Shown here: positions 27,487 through 38,444 of the stretch, piece after piece
Position numbering within the stretch: position 1 is the first letter of the stretch
How the letters are laid out: every line of letters starts with the position of its first letter
Assembly (NCBI RefSeq): GCF_003704095.1
Contig: NW_020846105.1
Span: 186,001-243,311 of the forward strand
Length of the DNA stretch: 57,311 bases
Reading direction: 5' to 3'
Origin: Pocillopora damicornis
Lineage: Eukaryota
Notes under the pieces: generated by a model
The model's database searches: none
Seen by the model: the letters and a program-made list of their open reading frames with translations, nothing else
What the model was told of the DNA's origin: nothing
Program-made: the position numbers and the translations under genes

Positions 27487-28614
27487 ATGGTTTTCAGTGG
27501 AGATTTAAGTCAAAGGTTCTTTTTTGCGGCCGTTGCAATCATCTCTTTCACTGGAAATGTCTTCTTTATTGTGATTATTATACGCAATAGGAAACTACTG
27601 AGAAAAGCTTATCACAAGATAATACTGAGCTTGGCCATCACCGATATGATGATAGGTTAGTCTATGTTGCAATTTTGAACATTGAGGTTACTGTCTTACA
27701 AAACTTATGAAATTTACCATGAACTATCCCAAAAATAAGCATTTGAAATTATTGAGGTGATGATAATTTTTCTCTTCTTTCTAGGTCTTTGTCTTGTCTT
27801 AACACCAGTGTATATTATTGGTCAAAAACCAGCTCTAACAAGCAAGAATGTTGGCTCTGCGATGTTTTGCTACATCATAGGAAATCAATATCTTGTATTT
27901 ACGCTGGGAATCGTTTCCTTGTATACCGTTACGTTACTTGCAGTGGAGCGCTGGTGTGCTGTATTTCGTCCCTTTGAACATCGAACAACTTTTAGAATTC
28001 ACAAAGTGCGACAGTATCTGATCGTTATTTGGATTGCTTCCTTTGCTACAAATAGCACTCACATCTTAGAGACCAAGTATTTTCTTAACAATGTCAACAC
28101 AACTGAACGTTGTGTGTTCCAAGGGATAGCCAGCAGAGAGGCGAGAGTTGTCATAGGAGTTGTAGAGATTTTCTTAAAATTTCTGATACCATTTTTAATT
28201 CTCGTGGTGTCTTTCACTCACCTTTATCGTTTCATGAAGGATTCACTTGTTGTTGCAACGACTCATCCAAGCAATTACATTGCCCTTACACGTGTCACAC
28301 ATATGGCTGCCGCAACATCGTTGGTGATGGTGTTGTGTTGGTTTCCCAACCAACTTGTTTATTTACTATTCAAGCTCGATGTTGTGCAGCTGAATACCCC
28401 ATTTCATAAAGCAACAGTTATTGTTTGCATGTTCAACTCTTGTTTGAACCCTTGTATATTTCTGCTAAGTAACAAACTATACAGAAAAAAGGCAAAAGAA
28501 CTACTCCCTAAGTGCAGAGGATCAGTAAAGGACTTCGACTTAACTTCGACAGAATCAAAGAAGGTGGTTCAGTCTGTTGTACCCGTAAAGTTTCTAGAGG
28601 GAAATATCCTCTAA
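27487..28614 (+). CDS. Class A (rhodopsin-like) orphan GPCR 1, ~332 aa, peptide-receptor-like
   Basis: Exons 27487-27655 and 27785-28614 (phase 1). Motifs: GN (TM1), LAITD (TM2), ERW (TM3), CWFP (TM6), NSCLNP (TM7). An acceptor at 27474 suggests an upstream exon, so the start is uncertain. Confidence 0.88.
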
Positions 28615-30648
28615 GAGGAGAAAATGGAGATATTTGATCCTTTTTAATTGTATAGTAATGACCTGGGTTAAAAAAAAGTCGACCTTTCCATACGTATTTA
28701 TTTTTACTCATTTATACTATAGTGCAAATATCTGCAGACTGATAAGACGCCTTACGTCTCGGTGTTGAAACATCTGTATAGAGGGGCTATAAATCAAGAG
28801 ACAATCATGTGTAGCGTTGTTTACCAGAGTCTCGGTATGAACTATTATACACTGATAGCGGATGCGTATCCTCCATTTACGGATTGTGATAGATACTATC
28901 AAACTAAATGTAAACATGTTATAAGGTTTAACTAGCAGTATATTATATAAAATTTCAGCCAGTTTGCTCTAAAACAATGTCATCTAAATAGAGTCTTATT
29001 GTAGGCAAGTAGACTGTCATTTTTGTATTTAGCTGTCGTTGGAGATTTACCCTTTACGAAAAATACGAACAGTAGCTTGTTAGATCATAAGAATCTAAAT
29101 CTGTATATTTGTTACTGTTCATACGAAATCACAAACATTTTTCTCAGGGACAACAGTTGATAATAAAAAATATTTATGTGTGTTAAACTAGCAAATTATT
29201 GTACCAGAATAATTACATCAATAAAACGAAGCTTCTCATTATTATGTTTACTTCGTATCTTTAAGAATGGCTAGTATACCTAATTGGTTTCTCATCACAC
29301 AAGCAAACCCATCACCCCAAGAAAGGTGAAGAATTGAAATGTGAAACTCAGACTTATTCGTGAAGGGTGCCACCCGGGTTAAGGGCCTTATTTATTAAAG
29401 GGTTGGTATTGTTTGCAAGGAGCCTGGAGCTCTACCTGGGTAACATGTTATTTCACATACAGAATAGTTAATTTTGGTAAAGTGGTTAAGTTGCATGCCT
29501 ATACAGGGCAATACAAATTTATGCCTAACGGTTATGATTGTTGGTGATGTTGGAACGTGCTTCAGTCATAGCTACGATTTATATTTCATTCGAAGAAATC
29601 TTTTGTGTACTGTAGAGGTCAATGATATTAGAAATCGACAGTCGAGTGACAGCAGAGACTCTCATTTTCGATCCAATTATCCCCTGAAGATCTGAGAAGA
29701 AAATTAATCAGTTGATATCTGGTAATTTATCCAAAAATATAAAAAAGCAGAGTTTAATTTTGTATCGGGACAAATAATCGAATTTTAATTATGTTGTTGT
29801 TCTCTTTGTAGTCTCTGATAATATCCCCTTTGGCTGGAGATAAAAGACATGTGCTTTGGCGATCCGTGGAAAAGGCTGAAACCGGCTGAAAAGGTAAGAC
29901 GAAAATCCTGCCTCACGTTTAATGGAGTTGACGTCTCAGATTTTGTAGTCGATGTCAGTCAAAATGAGTTAAAATTATTGGTTTTTGAAGTCAGAACTTC
30001 ACATTAAAAAATCCTTGATGTCGACTTCTTAGGTAGAGAAAACTGATGCGCCAACCAGTAAGGATGGGCATCACAATTATCATGTTTGTGAATTTTTTTT
30101 TCTCTAAACACACAGAGGGAGGAGAAACGCACTTTGTGTGATTTCTATCTTTCTTATTATGATTCGATTGGTAAGGCTGCAAGACTCGCGACCAAGATGT
30201 TTCGAAGCTGTTTTCTAGAATATTATTAAAAATATATAAATAAAGAGAAAACGAGAGGTTTTTTTTTGTTACTCGCTTTGATGGCAGTGCTCCGATATGT
30301 ATGTCATTTCTTTCATCAAATTAAATAATAAAAAAAAAATCAAAGCTTCGAAGAGAAAGAATTACCAACTTTTCAGAAAAACATCATAAATTTTGCAGGC
30401 AGAGATAGGTTCCGGATAATTGCCTTTAATAGGACTGACATGGTAAACCCTAAGCAAATTGGCTGGCGACATCAATTATCATTACACGTCATTCGGAAAC
30501 ATAACACCGGACGATACACCCTGACTGCTGCTATTGCCGAAGTATAACATTTGCATTGGAGCAAGCCAAGTCTAAGGAAATATAATTCACTAGCCATAAA
30601 AGCAACATATATTGCGAATTTATCCGTACACTAGTCTAATTGGCGAAA

Positions 30649-32662
30649 ATGAAGGCAGGCATAAGAGTTTTGTTTGGTATCATAGGATCTCTCGCCATCA
30701 TTAACAACAGCCTTCTGCTGGTGGTAATTTTTCGAAACAGAGCCCTGCTGAAGACTCCATACAACAGGCTAGTTTTAAGCTTGGCCATTACTGACTTAAT
30801 AACAGGTAAATCACCATTCTCTTTAAATGAAAAACGAGAGAATATTCGCTTGATAAAAAATTATTGTTTCCAAATGAATTACTGACGATAATCAAGAAGT
30901 GCTAAACGAAAAATCCTTTTTTTAATTTGAAATCGTCGCGTGGAATAACACGCACTTTTTATATTTTACTTCTCCCCTAGACACTTGTGTGCCTTTCATA
31001 TCTTAGCCCCTAGAGAATGATAGCTTTCTCTTTTTCATATGTTTGGTCGCACGGAGCCCTTCATCGTAATTAATTAAATAGTGTTCTATCTTAACGCAAG
31101 AAAATCGATGGCTTCCGAATGGTAACCATGTCAAAGGTGGCATTTGCGTATTTGGTGCCAGATGTGTAACTTTTCTCAGTTTTAATTCTAAAACAATTTT
31201 AGCCTGTAATTCTAGAGAATAGAATTATGATTTTCAGGAATAAGTTGGTGAAATCTTTCTACTGATTGACAGATGTCAATCTCTGCTAAAATTGCTTTTA
31301 ATTTTAGAATTGCTTATTGGAAGTTGTTTGTTTTTTAAGTCACCTCTACAAGAACTTCCCTCAGAAACTGCAATTTAAAACGAAAAAGTTTTTTTTTCTG
31401 TTGAGGGGAAAGTTACAGTAGAAAAAAGCTCAGTGAGTTTTCATTACCGTGAATACGATAGGCATCATACACCAGCAGCTCAGTGCAGTGTATCATTGAG
31501 TTCCCCTACGCATACTCTATGCGAAGACATGTTTAGCCTTAATCTAAACATTTCAAGCTAAGTAAACTTCCATTCAAAGTAGGGTTTTTACTTATGATAA
31601 TCACACATCTGTCTAGTTTTGACGGTTGGGCTCTAATACTCTTCCCAATATTCAATGATTTTCTTTCAACATCAAGTCACCTGCCTTTTTGTCAACAACC
31701 GCAACTGTAAATTTCTTTGATATATATGGTAATTAAGGAACAGAAATGTAAATCTTGGAATAGAGCATCTTTGTAAATAGAGATATGACGTATATGTCTA
31801 TTTCTATTTTAAAGGAATTGGTATTTTTGTTACACCTTCGTACATTATTGGGCCCGATTCGATCAAAGTTTCATCAGGAGGTTTTGGCCAGTTTTTCTGC
31901 AGAGTGATATATTCTCAGTACCTCGTGTTTACCCTGGGCATAGTATCAGTCTACACAGTTGCATGTATGGCTATGGACCGATGGCTTGCTGTAGTTCGCC
32001 CAACCAAGTACAAAACAATTTTAACGAAGTCGCGAGTAAACATTTGTGTGTTATGCGTATGGATACTCTCTGTGCTTTTGAACGCTCCGCACTTGATGGA
32101 AATTACAGCTACAAGCGGTTCAGACAGGAAAGAGCAGTGTTTATGGATTGTTCTTACCGGAGGTACTACTAGAAGAGTTGTGGCTTTTTTAGAATTTGTG
32201 GGAAAGTTTTTCCTTCCCCTTCTTGTCGCAGCCGTTACTTTAGTAAGTATCTACAACCATGTCAAGTCGTCACCGGCTCTGTTTCAAACAAATAGGGGCA
32301 AGGCTGGTTTAAGGTTACTACGGATGTGTTTGTTAACAGCGGTCATTCTTGGAGTGAGTTGGTTTCCCAACCAGTTGTATTATCTGTTGTTCAAATATGA
32401 CATAACTCGGATGGACACGCCCTTGCACCATTTTACTGTCTTTATGTGTATGTTCAACTCGTGTGTCAACCCTCTGATCTATTGCCTTAGCAACAAGATG
32501 TACCGTAGATACTTTACGCTTCTTTTGTGTCCGTGGCACAGGGCAAGGGTCACGGAGATGGAAATGACTGCGTGTGATTCTGTCAGCAGAGCTAATGAAA
32601 TAAGACCAACCCAAACAATTGGACCGAGTGAAGCAAGCGTAACAAACATGGCAATTGCTTAA
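30649..32662 (+). CDS. Class A orphan GPCR 2, ~334 aa
   Basis: Exons 30649-30805 and 31815-32662 (phase 1). Motifs: LAITD, DRW, RLLRMC, SWFP, NSCVNPLIY. Very short N-terminus. Confidence 0.88.
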
Positions 32663-33273
32663 TGATATTCCGAAACGCATCATAAGCAGCTGTTGCAGAA
32701 ATAATTGATGAAACAAACCAGCTTTTTATCTGTCTTCTTTGCCATGTATATAACTTTCTGGCTTATCCTTGAGTAAGTTAACAAGGAAAGTTGGTGTATC
32801 AGTCATAAAAGAAAAACGCCATATTATATTTTGAAAGTGAGCTGGTTCAAAGTCCCTGCAGGGGCTATGATCTTCTCTTCTTGTGCGAGACACTCTGCTC
32901 TGACAGTGCTATATATGAGAGGGGGGATTTCTTAGAGACACATTTCCCTATCTACTGATAAAATAATTTTGCGCAGTCTTTGAATGATGCCATTTCCAAT
33001 AACTTTTCCATTTCTTCTAATTTTTGTAACAGGGTGTAACGGTATTATTCGGTTTGTCGGCGTGGTTTTTCTATGTTACAGGTGGTTTCAGATGGTGGAT
33101 TATTCTGAAATATTACTTTGATAAAACGAAAAACAAGCTAAAATTTAAGTAAACCGGCAATGGATAACTCCACCGACAAAAAGTTTTATTCAATTTACAC
33201 AAATACAGTCAACTTTAAGCCATATATAACTTGTGGTGATGTCCCGTTAGTATCAGTTAGACCAGTATTGACG

Positions 33274-34701
33274 CTATGACGGCAGGGGCTGTCCTGTCCG
33301 TTCAAACTCCTTTTTGAGTTCGTCCCATTGTTCAGCTGTCATCATGATGTCGCCTTCAAATGCATCAACCCCGTTTTCTGTGAGCAATTACAATTTCTTT
33401 ATTAATCCACTGGTAAAAATTTCCAAAACGCTAAAACAGATCTTAGATTAGTCATGGCACTAATAAGGCCTAACACAGGTTGAATTCAGTTAATTATCCA
33501 TCTAGCAATTAAAATTTCATTTTTACTAAACTATGAGCCTGACGCGATTTCCAGTCCGGATATCGATTTCGTTGCGCTGTTCTCTTTTTAAACTTGTGAG
33601 CTATAGTGAACTCTTAGCAACCATCATGTTTCATAAAGAACTCGTATACTTCTCGTCTACTCAATCAATTCTTTTGGAAAGTAGAGATATTGGAATATTA
33701 TTTCCTTCTCCCGTATTCATTCTACGTTAACCTGGAGCATCGAGAGACGGCTATTTTACAAATCACACATTTATCAAGAAGTTTGAGTATTGGATTAGAA
33801 CTGTAGACCTGTTACGATAACCTTACTTTGATTCACGTCGATTTCACTTCTGTCATCGTCAACTTGCGGATCCCCTTCTGTAAAAAGATGTCCCTTTTCG
33901 TTCAGCCCATCTCATAACCCAATAAGATTTTTACATGAGATAAGTAACAAAAAACTTTTCTATCAGCAGATCACGAGAAAATGTTAAAATTGTTGTAAAG
34001 CTCAAAGGTAGAAGCGATCCATTCTCAGTCGTTAAAATTCATGACAAAGAGACTCAGTGATTACTGATAGGAAAATTTCACACACCAAGATTTATCCTCA
34101 CATCTAGGGTGCATATTGTAAGGAATTACTTCTTTAAGGCCTTCAGCTAGTGCGATGGCTGAACTGATTTAAGTTCTTAGAGACCTGGTAGAATTAACTT
34201 GACGCTTAAAAAATTTTGTGGATTTGAAAACAGGCGCAAAGGAAATACTTAATTTTTTCTCTTCGTGAATGATTTTCCTGCGTATATTAAACCGGTTTGC
34301 CGGCAAAAATGTATATTTATAGAAAAGAAATCTTCTTTTTTTTTTTTTTTAATAAAGAACCAAACGTTCGGGGAACATCATTCCTGAATCAACATACACA
34401 CATGCAAAAAGGCAAATGGATTATGATTCGATTTACCTTCATATATTCCAATTAGTCCTGATGCATTTTAAATACAATACGGGTAAAAATCCTAAACTTG
34501 GTGTATTTTCGAACCCATTTACCTTCCCTAACCAAACAAACATTATTTTACCCGTATTTTACCGCGTGTATTCATTGTGCAATTAGCCTATGAAAATAAG
34601 TCATGATTTTACTCTGTACCTTCCTCGGGAAGAGTTTCTTCGGTAGCAGTGACCACTGAAGGAGACAAGATTAGAATTAACAAGATAGAAACAACTTTCA
34701 T
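33274..34701 (-). CDS. Small secreted protein: signal peptide plus astacin-type propeptide (FEGDI) only, ~85 aa
   Basis: Exons 34701-34620, 34457-34437 (21-nt microexon, least certain; the frame holds without it), 33877-33827 and 33377-33274, all with phase-1 GT-AG introns. Protein: MKVVSILLILILSPSVVTA-TEETLPEEGLIGIYEEGDPQVDDDRSEIDVNQKNGVDAFEGDIMMTAEQWDELKKEFERTGQPLPS*. AATAAA on - at 33190-33185. Confidence 0.72.
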
Positions 34702-35369
34702 GTTACTTGAAGGGCTTGTTTCTTAAAAAAATCACAAATCTGAAATTTTTCTGTTGGAAAATGGACAGACTGAGCCTTGAATCAATTCAGCTGTATTTGC
34801 CCGCTGGCGAATTGTTGAGGAATTAGCCAATCAGATTTAGTGAATTATAAACGATACAAACAATGAAGATTTCAATGAATGTCGAATTGCATGCTAACTT
34901 TACAATACAATGTATCATGGCTACATATTTTGCACATAACATAACCAGTTCGGATATACTGATATCCTCTGGTCTCCACAAATATATGAGAGAATCTGTG
35001 TCCAGAAAGTCATGTCTCTATTTCAGATATTCAGATATTTGATTACAGCTAACTGAATACCTCTTTGCTTTTAGTCTAAGCTCTTTTCCATGCCATCTGT
35101 GTTTGTGTTTTTTCAAGAAACAAAGAGCAATCAATGTCTCAAAAGATTCCTCAAAAGAAGCATAAGTGAAGTTAAATATACCCTGCCCATTAAGGAGGCG
35201 GCATTTTTTTAAATGAAAATTTACTTAATGTCGTCTTCCACCAAATTAACTTTTTGGCTGAATCAGATGACGCGGTTTTGTTGGATTGGTCGGCGAATAG
35301 TTTTATTAAACCTCGCACCTTCGATACCCGCATTTGAAGTCGATACCTGCCTCTCAAGTTACGCTCAAG
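34702..35369. promoter_or_regulatory. Putative bidirectional promoter between the two secreted-protein genes
   Basis: 668 bp between divergent ATGs. CCAAT at 34827-34831 (AGCCAATCAG) and inverted ATTGG at 35285-35289, each about 80-130 bp from one ATG. Confidence 0.45.
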
Positions 35370-37060
35370 ATGAAGTGGTTATTTTTGCTCGCGTTCACTC
35401 TTCTGACCGTCGGCGTTCTAAGCGCTCCAGCAAACGACGAAGAAGATGGTAAGTTCTCTTTCATTCACAAGTTAATATCTAGCATGCAAGAAAATTCCTT
35501 TTTGAGATTTTCCCAAGTTTCTGCATTGCAACCCTCACTGCTACCCTCTTTTTTTTTTTGATATCTGTTACCAATAACAGATGCACTCACAAGACTTAAG
35601 ATGATTTTTGTTACTGTTGTGCTATCAGAACTTTGTAACGAAGGAGAGTTTTATTATCTTATTGATCTGATCCAATAGATTCTGAAATATTCACAGATTT
35701 TCAGATTTCCACACCGGATAGTCAATTAAGATTTAATGTGACAAATTTTGAAAAGATGCGAAGAGGTGATCTGCTATTGATGAAGGAAACTTTCCTCCTT
35801 GCTTTGCCATTAATTTCGAAAGAATTTGTCTTTCGTCCAGTTTGATATCCAGTTTCGTCGAGGTTGAGAATGAAGGTCCGATCAACACCAAAGAGAGCGA
35901 CTCGAAAATGTTATTGTTTAAGTAGTTGATGAGGTGTATAAACAGGTGACATCTGGGACAATACTAGGATTTACTATTGTGAGGTATGTGAAAACATACA
36001 ACCCTAATGGATACTCGAGCAGGAAAATGGGTTTAATTCAGAATGATAACCCACCTTTCATCCTAATTAAACTCATTATTCGGTTAAATTGAAATTACAA
36101 ATTGCTAGATTAAACGTTTCTATCAAGACCGAAACTCAAATGTAGCTTTTGTTTAAATGAAAATTAATTGCAATCGCAGAGTTATTGACGGAGTTGGAGA
36201 TAAAAGATAATGCTGAAGACGAACCTGAGACTGGGACGGGTCAGTGATCATTATTATTTGATAACAGTGATAATTTTTATAGAACTGGTATGATTTGTCA
36301 CTAAAAGTAATCTTGACCCAGTTGTTCGAAGAAGGAATTGCACATAGATTTAAGTGTTAGGGTATCGAAAAGTCTTGTTTAAGGTTAACCAAAGAGGGGT
36401 GTTGCTAATGTTTTCAAAAATTCGGCCTTGACTTCAGAGTATTAGAGTGTGATATAACTCGTGCTAAATTGCATTTCGGAGAAAACCTTTAGTTAACGCA
36501 TGATAATCTTTCTGATGTAGTTATACTCTATGTATGCCCAAAATTAACTTACATTTTTACGTGTGATTTTCCAAAAAGAAGAGGAACGCTTTGTTCGGGA
36601 AGTGGAGGACGAAGAGGAAGAAGAAGAACTGGAAGAAACAGTAATGAAAGACACCGTCGAAAACGATGAGACTGATGGTATAAATTCTTTATTTACCAAG
36701 AAGAGCGTTATAATAAAATATTTTTCGTCGTGGTTTTAAAACACGGTACCTGATATTTAGCGCTGCCAAGCTTTATTGTATTGATTTTTATCAATGTTGA
36801 TGATGATTAATCTTAAAGGTCAAATTTATGCATGAATACACACAACAGTGTTCAAAGTTTATCCTTAAATCTAGTATATTTTCTCTTTTTCATGTAACTT
36901 CTTTTTTGCGTCTTTTTGATGCTCAGTACTTTCTAACATTTTGAATCAACTGTTTATTTGCATTTTGTCTTTTGTTTTCCTAGAAGTCAGCGAAAAGAAG
37001 ACCTCAGTCGAAACCGAACAACCCTTTGAAGACAGCGAAGTAGATGATACCATTGAATAA
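35370..37060 (+). CDS. Small secreted, highly acidic protein (104 aa)
   Basis: Exons 35370-35448, 36180-36239, 36579-36677 and 36984-37060, all with phase-1 GT-AG introns, 315 nt open. Protein: MKWLFLLAFTLLTVGVLS-APANDEEDELLTELEIKDNAEDEPETGTEEERFVREVEDEEEEEELEETVMKDTVENDETDEVSEKKTSVETEQPFEDSEVDDTIE*. AATAAA overlaps the stop. Confidence 0.78.
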
Positions 37061-37180
37061 AACGGTTCTAAAAAACTGTTCGAAAGAGGGAATTCTTTAC
37101 AGATTGTTGTTAACTATGGGAGTATTTATTAAACTTAAGGATACACGGGGAAATCTCTTCTCTGTTATTATATATTATTG

Positions 37181-37183
<3 letters not shown>

Positions 37184-37224
<41 letters not shown>
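37184..37224. repeat. (TTA)n microsatellite
   Basis: About 13 perfect TTA units. Confidence 0.95.
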
Positions 37225-37569
37225 GTATGATGTTATTAATGTTTTTGTAGCATAACACTCATGCGGCAAACATCTACTCTGACACACTTTCCTGGGTTTT
37301 TTGTGATCAGATAGGCACAAACAACCCTACGATATCACTATTTTTTTTAAAGAGTGGTAACGCGCATTCGTTATGATCTCTCAGCCCTAGCCCCAAACAA
37401 AAAATTTATTGCTATTTTTTCTCATGCAAGGTTTATTTTTCGTCTCCTTATTCCCGGTTTGATATCTTTGGTTTCTCTAGTTCACAAGCGAACCTTTCTG
37501 TTGCCGGCAGCAGCTCCTAGTTGGCTTTCCTTAGACCTTATTTAAGGTATTCCACTTCGGTAACCAACG

Positions 37570-38444
37570 TCAAATGCGAATTTCAGAAGCACTCCGTGAA
37601 TTGTAGTCATCAAAGCGAGACGTTCTTGCCCCTGGAAAGCTTTGCTGGGTATATCCTGATGCCGTGTTACTGTTGCGCATCGTATGAGCTCGCTTATCAT
37701 CCGAAATGACATCTGCGGCATCATATCCCGATCGCCACGGACAAAGAAAGTTTATGAAGTGTTTTCTGTAAGATGGGTTAATTGCGCAGTAAATGAAGGG
37801 GTTGAGGGTGGAATTTCCCATGCACATAACTACCGTTACTTGATGTGCAGCGGTATCCATTTGGGTAATGTCAAACTTGAACAACAAGTAATACACTTGG
37901 TTAGGAAACCAACATATTGCCAAAACCACTGCAGTAATTGCACACATGCGCAGTAGACGTACACCAGCTTTACCTCTATTTGTTTGAAACAGAGCTGGCG
38001 AATCCCGAACTTTGACCCACAGACTCAGGAACGACAAACATGTGATAACAAGTGGCACGAAAAACTTTCCCAAGAACTCAATTAATGCAACTCCTCTTCT
38101 GACGTCTCCCGTCGTCAGCGAAACCCATTCACAGTGATTTTCGGGCCCCAGTTTCATTTCGAAAAGGTGAGGGGCGTTAAACAGAAACGATATGAACCAT
38201 ACAGTTGCCACCATTATATAGATTCTGTAACTTTTAAAACCTGCTCTGTACCGAGCAGGCTTTGCCACTGCAAACCATCTCTCGAGAGATAAACACGTGA
38301 TTGTATAGACTGAAACAATGCCGAGGGTAAACACGAGGTAGTATGATACGACTATTCGGCAGAACAGCTCACCAGCGAGGCCACTTGGGATTGGAAAGTT
38401 GTTGATCCCTATGATGTAAGATGGCGTCAAAATCAGGCCTACTC
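37570..38444 (-). CDS. Class A orphan GPCR 3, exon 2 only (first coding exon not seen, probably in the gap)
   Basis: Acceptor TTCCACAG|GA GTA GGC at 38445/38444. Motifs: ERW, RLLRMC, CWFP, NSTLNPFIY. The assembly gap starts 8 nt upstream. Confidence 0.85.

What the first reader, a model, noticed from the sequence alone, without database searches (positions are those of the whole stretch)
33274..34701. Stand-alone astacin propeptide gene (FEGDI aspartate switch) with no protease domain: candidate secreted astacin inhibitor
Seen: a 3-4 exon gene absent from the ORF track. It encodes a signal peptide, an acidic linker and ...IDVNQKNGVDAFEGDIMMTAEQW..., then stops 20-odd residues later, with an AATAAA about 85 nt downstream. 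I see no HEXXHXXGXXH catalytic exon in the window. Known: F-x-G-D-I is the conserved astacin (M12A) prodomain motif whose Asp binds the catalytic zinc to keep the zymogen latent. Free propeptide-like inhibitors exist for other protease classes (CTLA-2 and crammer for papain-like cysteine proteases). Inference: a trans-acting, propeptide-derived inhibitor or chaperone of astacin/tolloid/meprin-type proteases. It could instead be a truncated relic.
Basis: partly seen in the sequence, partly recalled or inferred. Interest (0 to 1): 0.75.

Follow-up and report, generated by a model that had tools for sequence, protein, structure and literature searches.

The report
Stand-alone astacin propeptide-like coral gene
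Stony corals carry a small, expressed, secreted protein that looks like the "safety-catch" peptide of astacin proteases without any protease attached, so it may be a natural free-standing inhibitor of these enzymes, though that has not been tested.

Summary
A 3-exon minus-strand gene (ATG 34701, stop 33276-33274, AATAAA 33190-33185) encodes 78 aa. These are a signal peptide, an acidic disordered linker, FEGDI, a short helix, then stop. RNA contigs show both introns spliced in 3 of 4 runs (2 of 3 studies) and ends near 33169/33144. A minor acceptor at 33910 gives an 89-aa form. No astacin catalytic exon is in the window, and none on this contig among the 150 of 154 genome matches listed.

It is not a recent relic. 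A search without length limit found 9 real relatives, all 41-89 aa. Named ones come from Porites, Pocillopora and Oculina, covering both scleractinian suborders. Of 38 stored proteins with the module, 37 keep FEGDI. Of the 37 that have the C-terminal landmark, 33 stop 0-2 residues after it.

Descent from an astacin prosegment is likely but not proven. The best astacin paralogue matches 10 of 20 residues and the intron phase agrees. However, flanks alone give P 0.13 for this protein, and FEGDI also occurs in unrelated proteins.

Trans-inhibition is inferred only. A 2026 paper shows that a synthetic meprin beta propeptide inhibits its enzyme. The literature searches listed in the report found no paper describing such a natural gene.

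The parts
34702..34892 (-). 5' untranslated region (minimum extent)
   Evidence: RNA contig X1 record 6 covers 34620-34892 and carries the exon 1/exon 2 joint. X2 record 14 reaches 35266 but may be unspliced or DNA.
34620..34701 (-). Exon 1, coding: ATG at 34701, 27 codons plus 1 base (phase 1)
   Evidence: The joint 33877/34620 is seen in X1, X2 and X9.
34645..34701 (-). Signal peptide, residues 1-19, with likely cleavage after V-T-A
   Evidence: Read by inspection. AlphaFold gives a helix at residues 2-12. Full-length relatives have the same kind of N-terminus. No dedicated signal-peptide predictor was available.
33878..34619 (-). Intron 1 (742 nt, GT..AG, phase 1)
   Evidence: Joint 33877/34620 in 3 of 4 runs.
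33878..33910 (-). Alternative 5' extension of exon 2: 11 in-frame codons, giving an 89-aa isoform. It corresponds to the (D/K)EGIPLTE segment of other corals.
   Evidence: Joint 33910/34620 in X9 only, depth 5.9 against 20.2. Translation. The Pocillopora meandrina model P0029 uses this form.
33827..33877 (-). Exon 2: acidic linker (..GDPQVDDDRSEIDVNQ), phase 1 at both ends
33378..33826 (-). Intron 2 (449 nt, GT..AG, phase 1)
   Evidence: Joint 33377/33827 in X1, X2 and X9. It is retained in X8 record 19 and in low-depth contigs of the other runs.
33277..33377 (-). Exon 3, coding part: (K)NGVDAFEGDIMMTAEQWDELKKEFERTGQPLPS
   Evidence: This peptide is unique in the genome.
33346..33360 (-). FEGDI codons. 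D54 is the candidate zinc-binding aspartate.
   Evidence: C2740:219346-219360. The motif is invariant in alignment A1.
33295..33336 (-). Predicted amphipathic helix, residues 59-72, conserved across the family
   Evidence: AlphaFold on A1 gives helix 59-72, with block pLDDT of 88 for residues 61-70. Invariant Q61, K66 and T72 lie in it.
33274..33276 (-). Stop codon TAG, at a position conserved within 0-2 residues across the family
33144..33273 (-). 3' untranslated region with AATAAA at 33190-33185
   Evidence: Contig ends at 33169 (X8) and 33144 (X9). Sequence. In X1 and X2 the unstranded contig runs on into the convergent GPCR gene.

Best explanation
This is a real, ancient, single-copy coral gene for a small secreted acidic protein of 78 aa, with a minor 89-aa isoform. 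The protein consists only of a signal peptide and a disordered segment of the astacin-prosegment type, followed by a short conserved helix. It most likely arose from the 5' exons (signal peptide plus prosegment) of an astacin gene and has been kept on its own since before the two scleractinian suborders split. The proposed mechanism is that the free peptide lies in the active-site cleft of one or more secreted astacins. The aspartate of the invariant FEGDI would replace the zinc-bound water, as in the zymogen's aspartate switch, so the peptide would inhibit the enzyme in trans. The helix and the acidic N-terminal part would provide affinity and selectivity. What is shown: gene structure, splicing, polyadenylation signal, absence of a catalytic domain, and conservation of the motif and of the stop. 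What is inferred: descent from an astacin, binding, and inhibition.
For: Expression and gene structure:
- Both introns are spliced in 3 of 4 RNA runs, from 2 of 3 studies.
- The identical 78-aa ORF is on record from transcript contigs as P0028.
- No catalytic exon is present.
- A convergent GPCR gene begins directly downstream.

Conservation:
- All 9 real hits in a search of 1.84 billion representatives without length limit are 41-89 aa and match up to their C-terminus.
- Named members come from Porites lobata, P. evermanni and P. harrisoni (89 aa), Pocillopora meandrina and Oculina patagonica (two genes). These span the suborders Refertina and Vacatina.
- FEGDI, T58, Q61, K66, T72, Q74 and P77 are invariant in 16 sequences.
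- 37 of 38 module-bearing proteins keep FEGDI, and 33 of the 37 with the landmark end 0-2 residues after it.

Likeness to astacin prosegments:
- The review PMC9848320 (passages read) says astacin prosegments are 34-486 residues long, essentially unstructured, and share only FXGDI, whose Asp binds the zinc.
- This protein is predicted disordered from residue 13 to 58.
- The comparison set of this genome's own prosegment exons is validated, because it hits proastacin 3lq0 at E 7.5e-5 and pro-meprin beta 4gwm.
- hhalign of the family against that set gives P 9e-6, and 0 of 300 column shuffles reach the score.
- BLASTP of P0028 against the prosegment exon of an astacin at C2193 gives 10/20 identities, E 1e-5. 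The divergent member P0025 gives 12/19, E 4e-7.
- The downstream flank alone gives P 0.03 for P0028, 0.004-0.02 for six other members tested, and below 1e-5 for P0025. All 12 non-astacin FEGDI contexts score lower.
- The RNA-proven phase-1 intron lies 23 nt before the G codon. In the nearest paralogues a phase-1 acceptor is predicted 29 nt before it.

Precedent for the mechanism:
- A synthetic meprin beta propeptide containing FEGDI, in which D52 binds the zinc, inhibits meprin beta in trans. IC50 is 1.35 uM, or 0.68 uM after C-terminal trimming (PMC13680589; abstract and passages read).
Against: - No database-wide search links the family to astacins. phmmer and the family profile against PDB sequences find no astacin zymogen at E up to 10. 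The best FEGDI hit there is an unrelated protein, 2ox7. Pfam finds nothing.
- The hhalign result is partly circular, because both alignments were picked for the motif.
- With the motif removed, the window's own protein is not significant overall: total flank P is 0.22 with 12 astacin exons and 0.13 with 19. Its upstream flank scores negatively.
- FEGDI is not diagnostic in this genome. There are 107 coding 15-mers against 51 for the reversed control. Of the 100 examined, 9 are astacin prosegments, 12 lie in other long open frames (for example SH3-like and MAM-like), and 79 lie in short frames.
- One Oculina paralogue has FEDDI.
- The major Pocillopora isoform skips a segment that other corals conserve.
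- No binding, co-fold or inhibition test could be run, and the target astacin is unknown.
Confidence: 0.45

Rival explanations
1. The protein derives from an astacin prosegment but is not an inhibitor. It might act as a competing or decoy substrate, as a folding or secretion helper for astacins, or as a ligand for another partner through its conserved helix.
For: The most conserved part besides FEGDI is the helix and the TGQP.P tail. Only the start of this helix has a counterpart in astacin prosegments. The meprin beta paper could not tell inhibition from substrate competition in the case of ovastacin (Discussion passage).
Against: In a non-inhibitory role, invariance of the complete zinc-switch motif FEGDI (37 of 38) would be unexplained. 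Prosegments run backwards through the cleft, which prevents their cleavage (PMC9848320).
Confidence: 0.25
2. The family has no descent from astacins. It would be a scleractinian secreted acidic peptide in which FEGDI is a chance or convergent linear motif, with a function such as calcium or mineral handling or signalling.
For: FEGDI occurs in unrelated proteins. The flank test for the window's protein is not significant overall. No database-wide hit to astacins was found. The mature peptide is very acidic, with 19 D/E against 5 K/R of 59 residues (my count). All named members are stony corals.
Against: The family's invariant T58 and Q61 fall on the positions conserved after FEGDI in this genome's astacin prosegments. 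BLASTP to the C2193 astacin exon gives E 1e-5 and 4e-7. Intron phase and position agree. The motif sits about 35 residues behind the signal peptide in a disordered stretch, as it does in zymogens.
Confidence: 0.2
3. It is a recently truncated astacin pseudogene or transcriptional noise.
For: The in-frame letters just past the stop read RQYW, at the distance from the Asp where astacins have their mature N-terminal (Y/L)W. This is a weak, possibly chance, resemblance. Variant density is similar in coding and non-coding parts: 1 variant in 234 coding nt against 10 in about 1320 non-coding nt shown. That comparison is uninformative.
Against: The stop position and the motif are conserved across both scleractinian suborders. 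The transcript is spliced and carries an AATAAA signal just upstream of the contig ends. No full-length astacin with this prosegment exists among 1.84 billion representatives at E up to 1e-3.
Confidence: 0.05

Closest known systems
Astacin-family (MEROPS M12A) prosegments with the aspartate switch, such as those of crayfish proastacin and pro-meprin beta
   Same: A signal peptide is followed by a short, acidic, unstructured peptide carrying FXGDI, here exactly FEGDI as in proastacin and meprin beta. The residues after the motif follow the pattern x-[LM]-T-x-x-Q seen in this genome's astacins. A phase-1 intron lies just upstream of the motif.
   Different: No catalytic domain follows. The reading frame stops about where the mature enzyme would begin. 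It has its own conserved helix and TGQP.P tail, and it is a separate, conserved gene.
Synthetic meprin beta propeptide used as a trans-inhibitor (PMC13680589, 2026)
   Same: It is a free peptide with an acidic N-terminal part and FEGDI, and it inhibits the mature enzyme at about 1 uM. By eye, 4 of the 10 residues before FEGDI are identical to the Pocillopora protein and 3 more are conservative (letters; no tool was run on this).
   Different: It is a laboratory peptide cut from a zymogen, not a natural gene. It has no C-terminal helix, and in that study trimming the C-terminus improved inhibition.
Stand-alone propeptide-like inhibitors of other protease classes: CTLA-2, crammer and BCPI for papain-like enzymes, and propeptide-like inhibitors of subtilases (recalled, not checked here)
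   Same: The evolutionary logic is the same: a prodomain encoded without its protease that acts on the protease in trans.
   Different: These belong to different protease clans, have folded prodomains and use different inhibitory chemistry. Pfam detects no sequence relation.
Endogenous astacin inhibitors fetuin-B and sizzled
   Same: They are secreted proteins that inhibit astacin-family enzymes (fetuin-B: passages; sizzled: abstract listing of PMC9437010).
   Different: They are large folded proteins of unrelated families, not prosegment mimics.

Membership tests
Astacin prosegment (PRO region of M12A zymogens) | FXGDI motif with the zinc-binding aspartate | tested here: met
   FEGDI lies at residues 51-55. 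It is invariant in A1 and kept in 37 of 38 module-bearing proteins. The motif definition comes from PMC9848320.
Astacin prosegment (PRO region of M12A zymogens) | Lies directly behind a secretion signal and is essentially unstructured | tested here: met
   The N-terminus has a hydrophobic h-region and V-T-A (by inspection; no signal-peptide predictor). AlphaFold shows no secondary structure between residues 13 and 58, with pLDDT below 70 up to residue 50. The Atlas model of the Porites member has pLDDT 0.31.
Astacin prosegment (PRO region of M12A zymogens) | Followed in the same polypeptide by the catalytic domain (HEXXHXXGXXH, Met-turn) | tested here: not met
   The stop comes 23 residues after the motif and the transcript ends near 33150. 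There is no catalytic exon in the window, and none on the contig among the 150 of 154 matches listed. It therefore resembles a prosegment but is not part of a zymogen.
Astacin prosegment (PRO region of M12A zymogens) | Sequence similarity to bona fide prosegments beyond the motif | tested here: inconclusive
   BLASTP to the C2193 astacin exon gives 10/20 identities, E 1e-5, as the best of 19 exons looked at. Flanks only give total P 0.13 and downstream P 0.03 for P0028, and P 6.5e-4 for P0025. PDB searches find no astacin.
Astacin prosegment (PRO region of M12A zymogens) | The aspartate coordinates the catalytic zinc, with the chain running opposite to a substrate | not testable with these tools
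   Only single-chain prediction is on hand, and I did not build a fusion.
Pfam Astacin (PF01400) peptidase | Match to the catalytic-domain model | tested here: not met
   Exons 1 and 3 have no PF01400 match. PF01400 matches elsewhere in the genome, none of those listed on this contig.
Stand-alone propeptide-like protease inhibitors (functional class) | A separate gene encoding only a prodomain-like protein, conserved as such | tested here: met
Stand-alone propeptide-like protease inhibitors (functional class) | Inhibits the cognate protease in trans | not testable with these tools
   This needs a biochemical assay. The only precedent is the synthetic meprin beta propeptide.

The most novel reading that the evidence does not exclude
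Stony corals encode a natural, free-standing astacin prosegment: a secreted peptide of about 60-70 residues that switches mature astacins off in trans through the FEGDI aspartate. It would have been kept for as long as the two scleractinian suborders have been apart. As far as the searches here reach, it would be the first gene-encoded propeptide-only inhibitor known for a metzincin protease, and a natural template for selective peptide inhibitors of meprin- and tolloid-type enzymes.
Probability: 0.4. Interest if true: 0.8.

Novelty: new variant of a known kind. Interest (0 to 1): 0.62.

Why it matters
Astacins are greatly expanded in this coral, with 154 PF01400 exon matches. From general knowledge, cnidarian astacins act in venom, digestion, patterning and matrix processing. 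Known endogenous astacin inhibitors are few and are large proteins such as fetuin-B and sizzled. A conserved, gene-encoded prosegment mimic would add a new and very small regulator class for this protease family.

It would also show that the prodomain-only inhibitor route, known for cysteine and serine proteases, was taken for a zinc protease too. It would give nature's own version of the peptide inhibitors now being engineered from the meprin beta propeptide (PMC13680589). The hypothesis is directly testable with a synthetic peptide of about 60 residues and a D-to-A control.

In practical terms, the gene is small enough to be missed by annotation. In the protein collections searched, only the Porites and Oculina models and a partial Pocillopora meandrina model carry names.

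Tried and rejected
Searches and tests that gave nothing or had problems:
- PDB sequence searches with exon 3 and with the family profile gave only chance hits and no astacin.
- Pfam on exons 1 and 3 gave nothing.
- The ESM Atlas search on P0017 gave no usable feature hit, and the structural neighbours of a pLDDT 0.31 model are meaningless.
- Searches of this genome with exon 3 and with the locus DNA found only the locus itself, so there is no close paralogue.
- The first hhalign shuffle control was spoiled by gappy columns: sd 15.1, maximum 131.6, and I did not count how many shuffles reached the real score. I repeated it on the 60 well-occupied columns: 0 of 300 shuffles reached the real score, maximum 16.4 against 31.8. 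The hhalign result remains partly circular.
- The first flank-only scoring used plain pseudocounts and 12 exons and gave P 0.31. With BLOSUM pseudocounts it gave P 0.22, and with 19 exons P 0.13.
- I hoped the genome-wide count of FEGDI-coding sites would show the motif to be astacin-specific. It did not.
- The possible relic of the mature N-terminus past the stop (RQYW) is too short to weigh.
- Three hits (P0001, P0011, P0012) are repeat proteins that matched by chance. Two cluster members (P0016, P0023) are unrelated bacterial proteins. I dropped all five.
- The bacterial promoter/terminator scan is irrelevant to a eukaryotic gene.
- Rfam on 32500-36500 gave one match far below its threshold.
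- I could not attach a taxon to most family members, because they come from unnamed Logan, ENA or JGI records.
- I could not compute dN/dS because no orthologous DNA was available.
- Literature searches: FEGDI gave 6 papers, 1 relevant. astacin + aspartate switch + propeptide gave 3. astacin + propeptide-like gave 1, irrelevant by title and abstract. astacin + prodomain + stand-alone + inhibitor gave 0. The accession numbers of the Porites and Oculina proteins gave 0. astacin + coral + propeptide + inhibitor gave 17, of which 12 were listed and 1 was read in passages.
Coral secretome, skeleton-proteome or single-cell tables, and Supplementary Table S1 of PMC9848320, could mention this protein and I could not see them.
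Full report
WHAT IS THERE. The window is C2740:186001-243311 of a 234-Mb stony-coral genome. Earlier notes of this scan call it a robust coral. Over exons 2-3 its protein is identical to a Pocillopora meandrina model. From recall only, the assembly size fits Pocillopora damicornis.

On the minus strand lies a 3-exon gene:
- Exon 1 is 34701-34620: ATG, then a signal-peptide-like MKVVSILLILILSPSVVTA, then TEETLPEE.
- Exon 2 is 33877-33827, an acidic linker.
- Exon 3 runs from 33377 to the stop at 33276-33274 and carries NGVDAFEGDIMMTAEQWDELKKEFERTGQPLPS.

Both introns are GT..AG and phase 1, and the frame has 78 codons. AATAAA lies at 33190-33185, 84 nt after the stop.

RNA EVIDENCE. One read-laying run covered 30000-35900 with four RNA runs from three studies, all as Logan contigs.
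- Joint 33377/33827 is present in X1, X2 and X9, and so is joint 33877/34620.
- X8 has only an unspliced contig, 33169-33853.
- A minor joint 33910/34620 occurs in X9 alone. It adds 11 in-frame codons (GLNEKGHLFTE...). These correspond to the (D/K)EGIPLTE segment that other corals keep, and to the exon used in the P. meandrina model P0029.
- Contigs end at 33169 (X8) and 33144 (X9), just past the AATAAA.
- Exon 3 is continuous across the stop in all contigs that cover it.

In X1 and X2 one contig runs from 33377 down to 31811. This is not a longer 3' exon of the gene. A convergent plus-strand rhodopsin-type GPCR gene ends there. Its main exon is 31815-32662 (7tm_1, E 8e-31), and a plus-strand GT..AG joint 30803/31813 is seen in X9. 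The contigs are unstranded, so they merge the two transcripts.

Contigs cannot give expression levels. The same 78-aa ORF is independently on record as P0028, called on four transcript contigs.

NO PROTEASE DOMAIN.
- No HExxHxxGxxH occurs in any frame of the window.
- Twenty catalytic-exon peptides from this genome's astacins found nothing in the window: best tblastn E 0.054 over 19 residues, best hmmsearch E 0.91.
- PF01400 matches 154 places in the genome. None of the 150 listed is on contig C2740. Only 150 of 251 first-look candidates were scored, so that list is a lower bound.
- Exon 3 and the locus DNA are single-copy in the genome.

A CONSERVED FAMILY, NOT A RELIC. I left out the joined step and searched exon by exon. 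Exon 3 (33 aa) was searched against 1.84 billion representative proteins with no length limit. This gave 12 hits at E up to 1e-3. Three are repeat proteins that matched by chance. The other nine are 41-89 aa and match up to their own C-terminus.

Further searches used the Porites protein as query and then a 16-sequence profile. Both see only proteins of about 0.55-1.75 times the query length. They added full-length members of 78-94 aa with signal peptides (P0013, P0033, P0035, P0036).

Named members are:
- Porites lobata, P. evermanni (named 'Secreted protein') and P. harrisoni, all 89 aa.
- Pocillopora meandrina (a partial model).
- Two Oculina patagonica genes on one contig.

Porites belongs to the suborder Refertina. 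Pocillopora and Oculina belong to Vacatina. From recall, this is the deep 'complex/robust' split of stony corals, hundreds of millions of years old. Most other members come from unnamed Logan, ENA or JGI records, so I cannot say whether the family exists outside Scleractinia.

In the 16-sequence alignment F51, E52, G53, D54, I55, T58, Q61, K66, T72, Q74 and P77 are invariant. The signal peptide and linker vary.

Among the 53 proteins stored at that point, 38 carry the module, in 22 distinct module-plus-tail strings:
- 37 have FEGDI and one Oculina paralogue has FEDDI.
- 37 have the C-terminal ..Q..P landmark. Of these, 33 end 0-2 residues after it and 4 run on for 8, 8, 15 or 24 residues.
- None reaches a catalytic domain.

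Some of these records are ORFs called on genomic contigs. Their N-termini are intron read-through, and their stop is simply the genomic one.

IS IT AN ASTACIN PROSEGMENT? The review by Gomis-Ruth and Stocker (PMC9848320; passages read) states three things. Astacin prosegments range from 34 to 486 residues. They share only the motif FXGDI. They are essentially unstructured peptides that run backwards through the cleft, with the motif's aspartate on the zinc.

By that definition the coral protein qualifies in everything except being attached to a protease:
- It has a signal peptide.
- AlphaFold on the family alignment gives a disordered stretch. There is a helix at 2-12, nothing from 13 to 58, and a helix at 59-72, with mean pLDDT 64. 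The Atlas model of P0017 has pLDDT 0.31.
- It has the exact FEGDI, as in crayfish proastacin (printed) and meprin beta.

I tried to go beyond the motif. I collected prosegment exons from this genome's own astacins. In 12 of 20 loci I found an [FYLIV][EQF]GD[IM] exon that continues in the same exon into the mature N-terminus W-x-x-G-V-I-P-Y. Their profile hits proastacin 3lq0 (E 7.5e-5), 6ht9, pro-meprin beta 4gwm (E 0.019) and BMP1, so the set is genuine.

hhalign of the family against this set gives probability 83% and P 9e-6 over about 20 columns. On occupancy-trimmed columns the real score is 31.8, and 0 of 300 column shuffles reach it. An earlier untrimmed control was spoiled by outliers. 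Both alignments were chosen for the motif, however, so this result is partly circular.

With the five motif residues left out, a position-specific score built from 19 astacin exons gives the following:
- The window's protein P0028: total P 0.13, downstream flank P 0.03.
- Six other members tested: downstream P 0.004-0.02.
- The most divergent members: total P 6.5e-4 (P0025) and 3.9e-4 (P0053).
- Twelve non-astacin FEGDI contexts of this genome all score lower on the downstream flank. Eleven of the twelve score lower in total.
- Real astacins, left out one at a time, score from -6.6 to 21.7 (median 3.3). P0028, at -6.0, sits at their lower edge.

The closest single astacin is in the C2193 tandem cluster. 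BLASTP of P0028 against its prosegment exon gives 10 of 20 identities (FEGDI, T, EQ, KK) and E 1e-5 for one comparison, but it was picked as the best of 19. P0025 gives 12 of 19 and E 4e-7.

The family's invariant T58 and Q61 are thus exactly the positions that these astacins conserve after the motif.

Gene structure agrees as well. The RNA-proven acceptor lies 23 nt before the G codon in phase 1. Phase 1 is the best predicted acceptor in 7 of the 9 paralogues of the first set that had a candidate. In the three nearest paralogues it lies 29 nt before the G codon. These acceptors are predictions, not RNA-verified.

Evidence against:
- No database-wide search connects the family with astacins.
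- The best FEGDI hit of the family profile in the PDB is an unrelated protein.
- FEGDI-coding 15-mers occur 107 times in the genome, against 51 for the reversed control.
- Of the 100 I looked at, 9 are astacin prosegment exons (6 by pattern, 3 by eye). Twelve sit in other long open frames, and 79, including this gene's short exon, sit in short frames.

I put descent from an astacin prosegment at roughly three in four.

HOW IT MOST LIKELY WORKS. This part is inferred and not shown. After signal-peptide removal, a very acidic peptide of 59 residues (or 70 in the long isoform) is secreted. It would occupy the cleft of a mature astacin as the prosegment does in the zymogen, with Asp54 taking the place of the zinc-bound water. 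The conserved amphipathic helix (residues 59-72) and the acidic N-terminal part would supply extra contacts and selectivity.

The direct precedent is a 2026 study (PMC13680589; abstract and passages read):
- The synthetic 39-residue meprin beta propeptide, with FEGDI and D52 on the zinc, inhibits mature meprin beta with IC50 1.35 uM, or 0.68 uM after removal of four C-terminal residues.
- It does not inhibit meprin alpha or the ADAMs, and it partly affects ovastacin.

By eye, 4 of the 10 residues before FEGDI in that peptide are identical to the Pocillopora protein and 3 are conservative. My own binomial arithmetic gives roughly 0.003 for that. No tool was used, and the comparison was noticed after the fact.

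RIVALS.
- The peptide is astacin-derived but acts otherwise, for example as a decoy substrate, a helper of folding or secretion, or a ligand through its helix.
- It is an unrelated acidic secreted coral peptide with a chance or convergent motif.
- It is a relic or noise. This is largely excluded by the conservation of motif and stop and by splicing.

NOVELTY. The literature searches listed under Tried and rejected found no description of a natural prosegment-only astacin-like gene, and none of the named proteins appears in the searched papers. The library does not hold most subscription papers, and supplements were closed. Stand-alone propeptide-like inhibitors are known for other protease classes (recalled). 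I therefore file this as a new variant of a known kind.

LIMITS.
- Only single-chain structure prediction was available, so no complex could be modelled.
- The RNA data are unstranded contigs, so they give neither expression levels nor exact transcript ends.
- The signal peptide was judged by inspection.

Noticed in passing
window 29849-32662 (+): A convergent rhodopsin-type GPCR gene ends tail-to-tail against the small gene. Its TM1 exon is 30640-30805 and its main exon is 31815-32662 (7tm_1, E 8e-31). RNA contigs of X1 and X2 join the main exon to a different upstream exon. By eye, the letters of that exon translate to a stretch of the ORF at 29849-30007.
   Followed up: partly
window 27757-28614 (+) and 37570-38430 (-): Two further long GPCR-like open frames carry the same ..RW..V.. 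and NP..Y-type motifs. The small secreted-protein gene is therefore embedded in a GPCR gene cluster.
   Followed up: no
window 35370-35448 (+): A plus-strand exon lies head-to-head with the small gene, about 670 nt from its ATG. It has an ATG, a signal-peptide-like MKWLFLLAFTLLTVGVLSA followed by acidic residues, and a GT donor at 35449. Short RNA contigs of very high depth (839-949) in X2 and X8 match it. They continue into letters whose by-eye translation I did not find in the window. It may be a highly expressed neighbour gene or a paralogue's shared exon.
   Followed up: partly
G000 C2193:465000-480000: A tandem cluster of astacin genes (several PF01400 exon matches on both strands). Their prosegment exons (FEGDILLTK(E/K)(Q/E)MEAVK..) are the ones most similar to the small protein's FEGDI-helix region.
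   Followed up: partly
G000 genome-wide; loci L024-L123: FEGDI-coding 15-mers occur 107 times against 51 for the reversed control. Besides astacin prosegments, the motif sits in unrelated open frames that look SH3-like (L049) and MAM-like (L087).
   Followed up: partly
Oculina patagonica proteins P0035 and P0037 (one contig): Oculina has two family genes, two gene numbers apart. One (78 aa) has FEDDI instead of FEGDI, and its annotated N-terminus lacks a signal peptide. It may be a diverging or mis-modelled paralogue.
   Followed up: no
window 34323-34363 and about 37170-37250: There is an A-run in intron 1, where reads are cut, and a trinucleotide run that reads as poly-Y or poly-N in two frames.
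   Followed up: no
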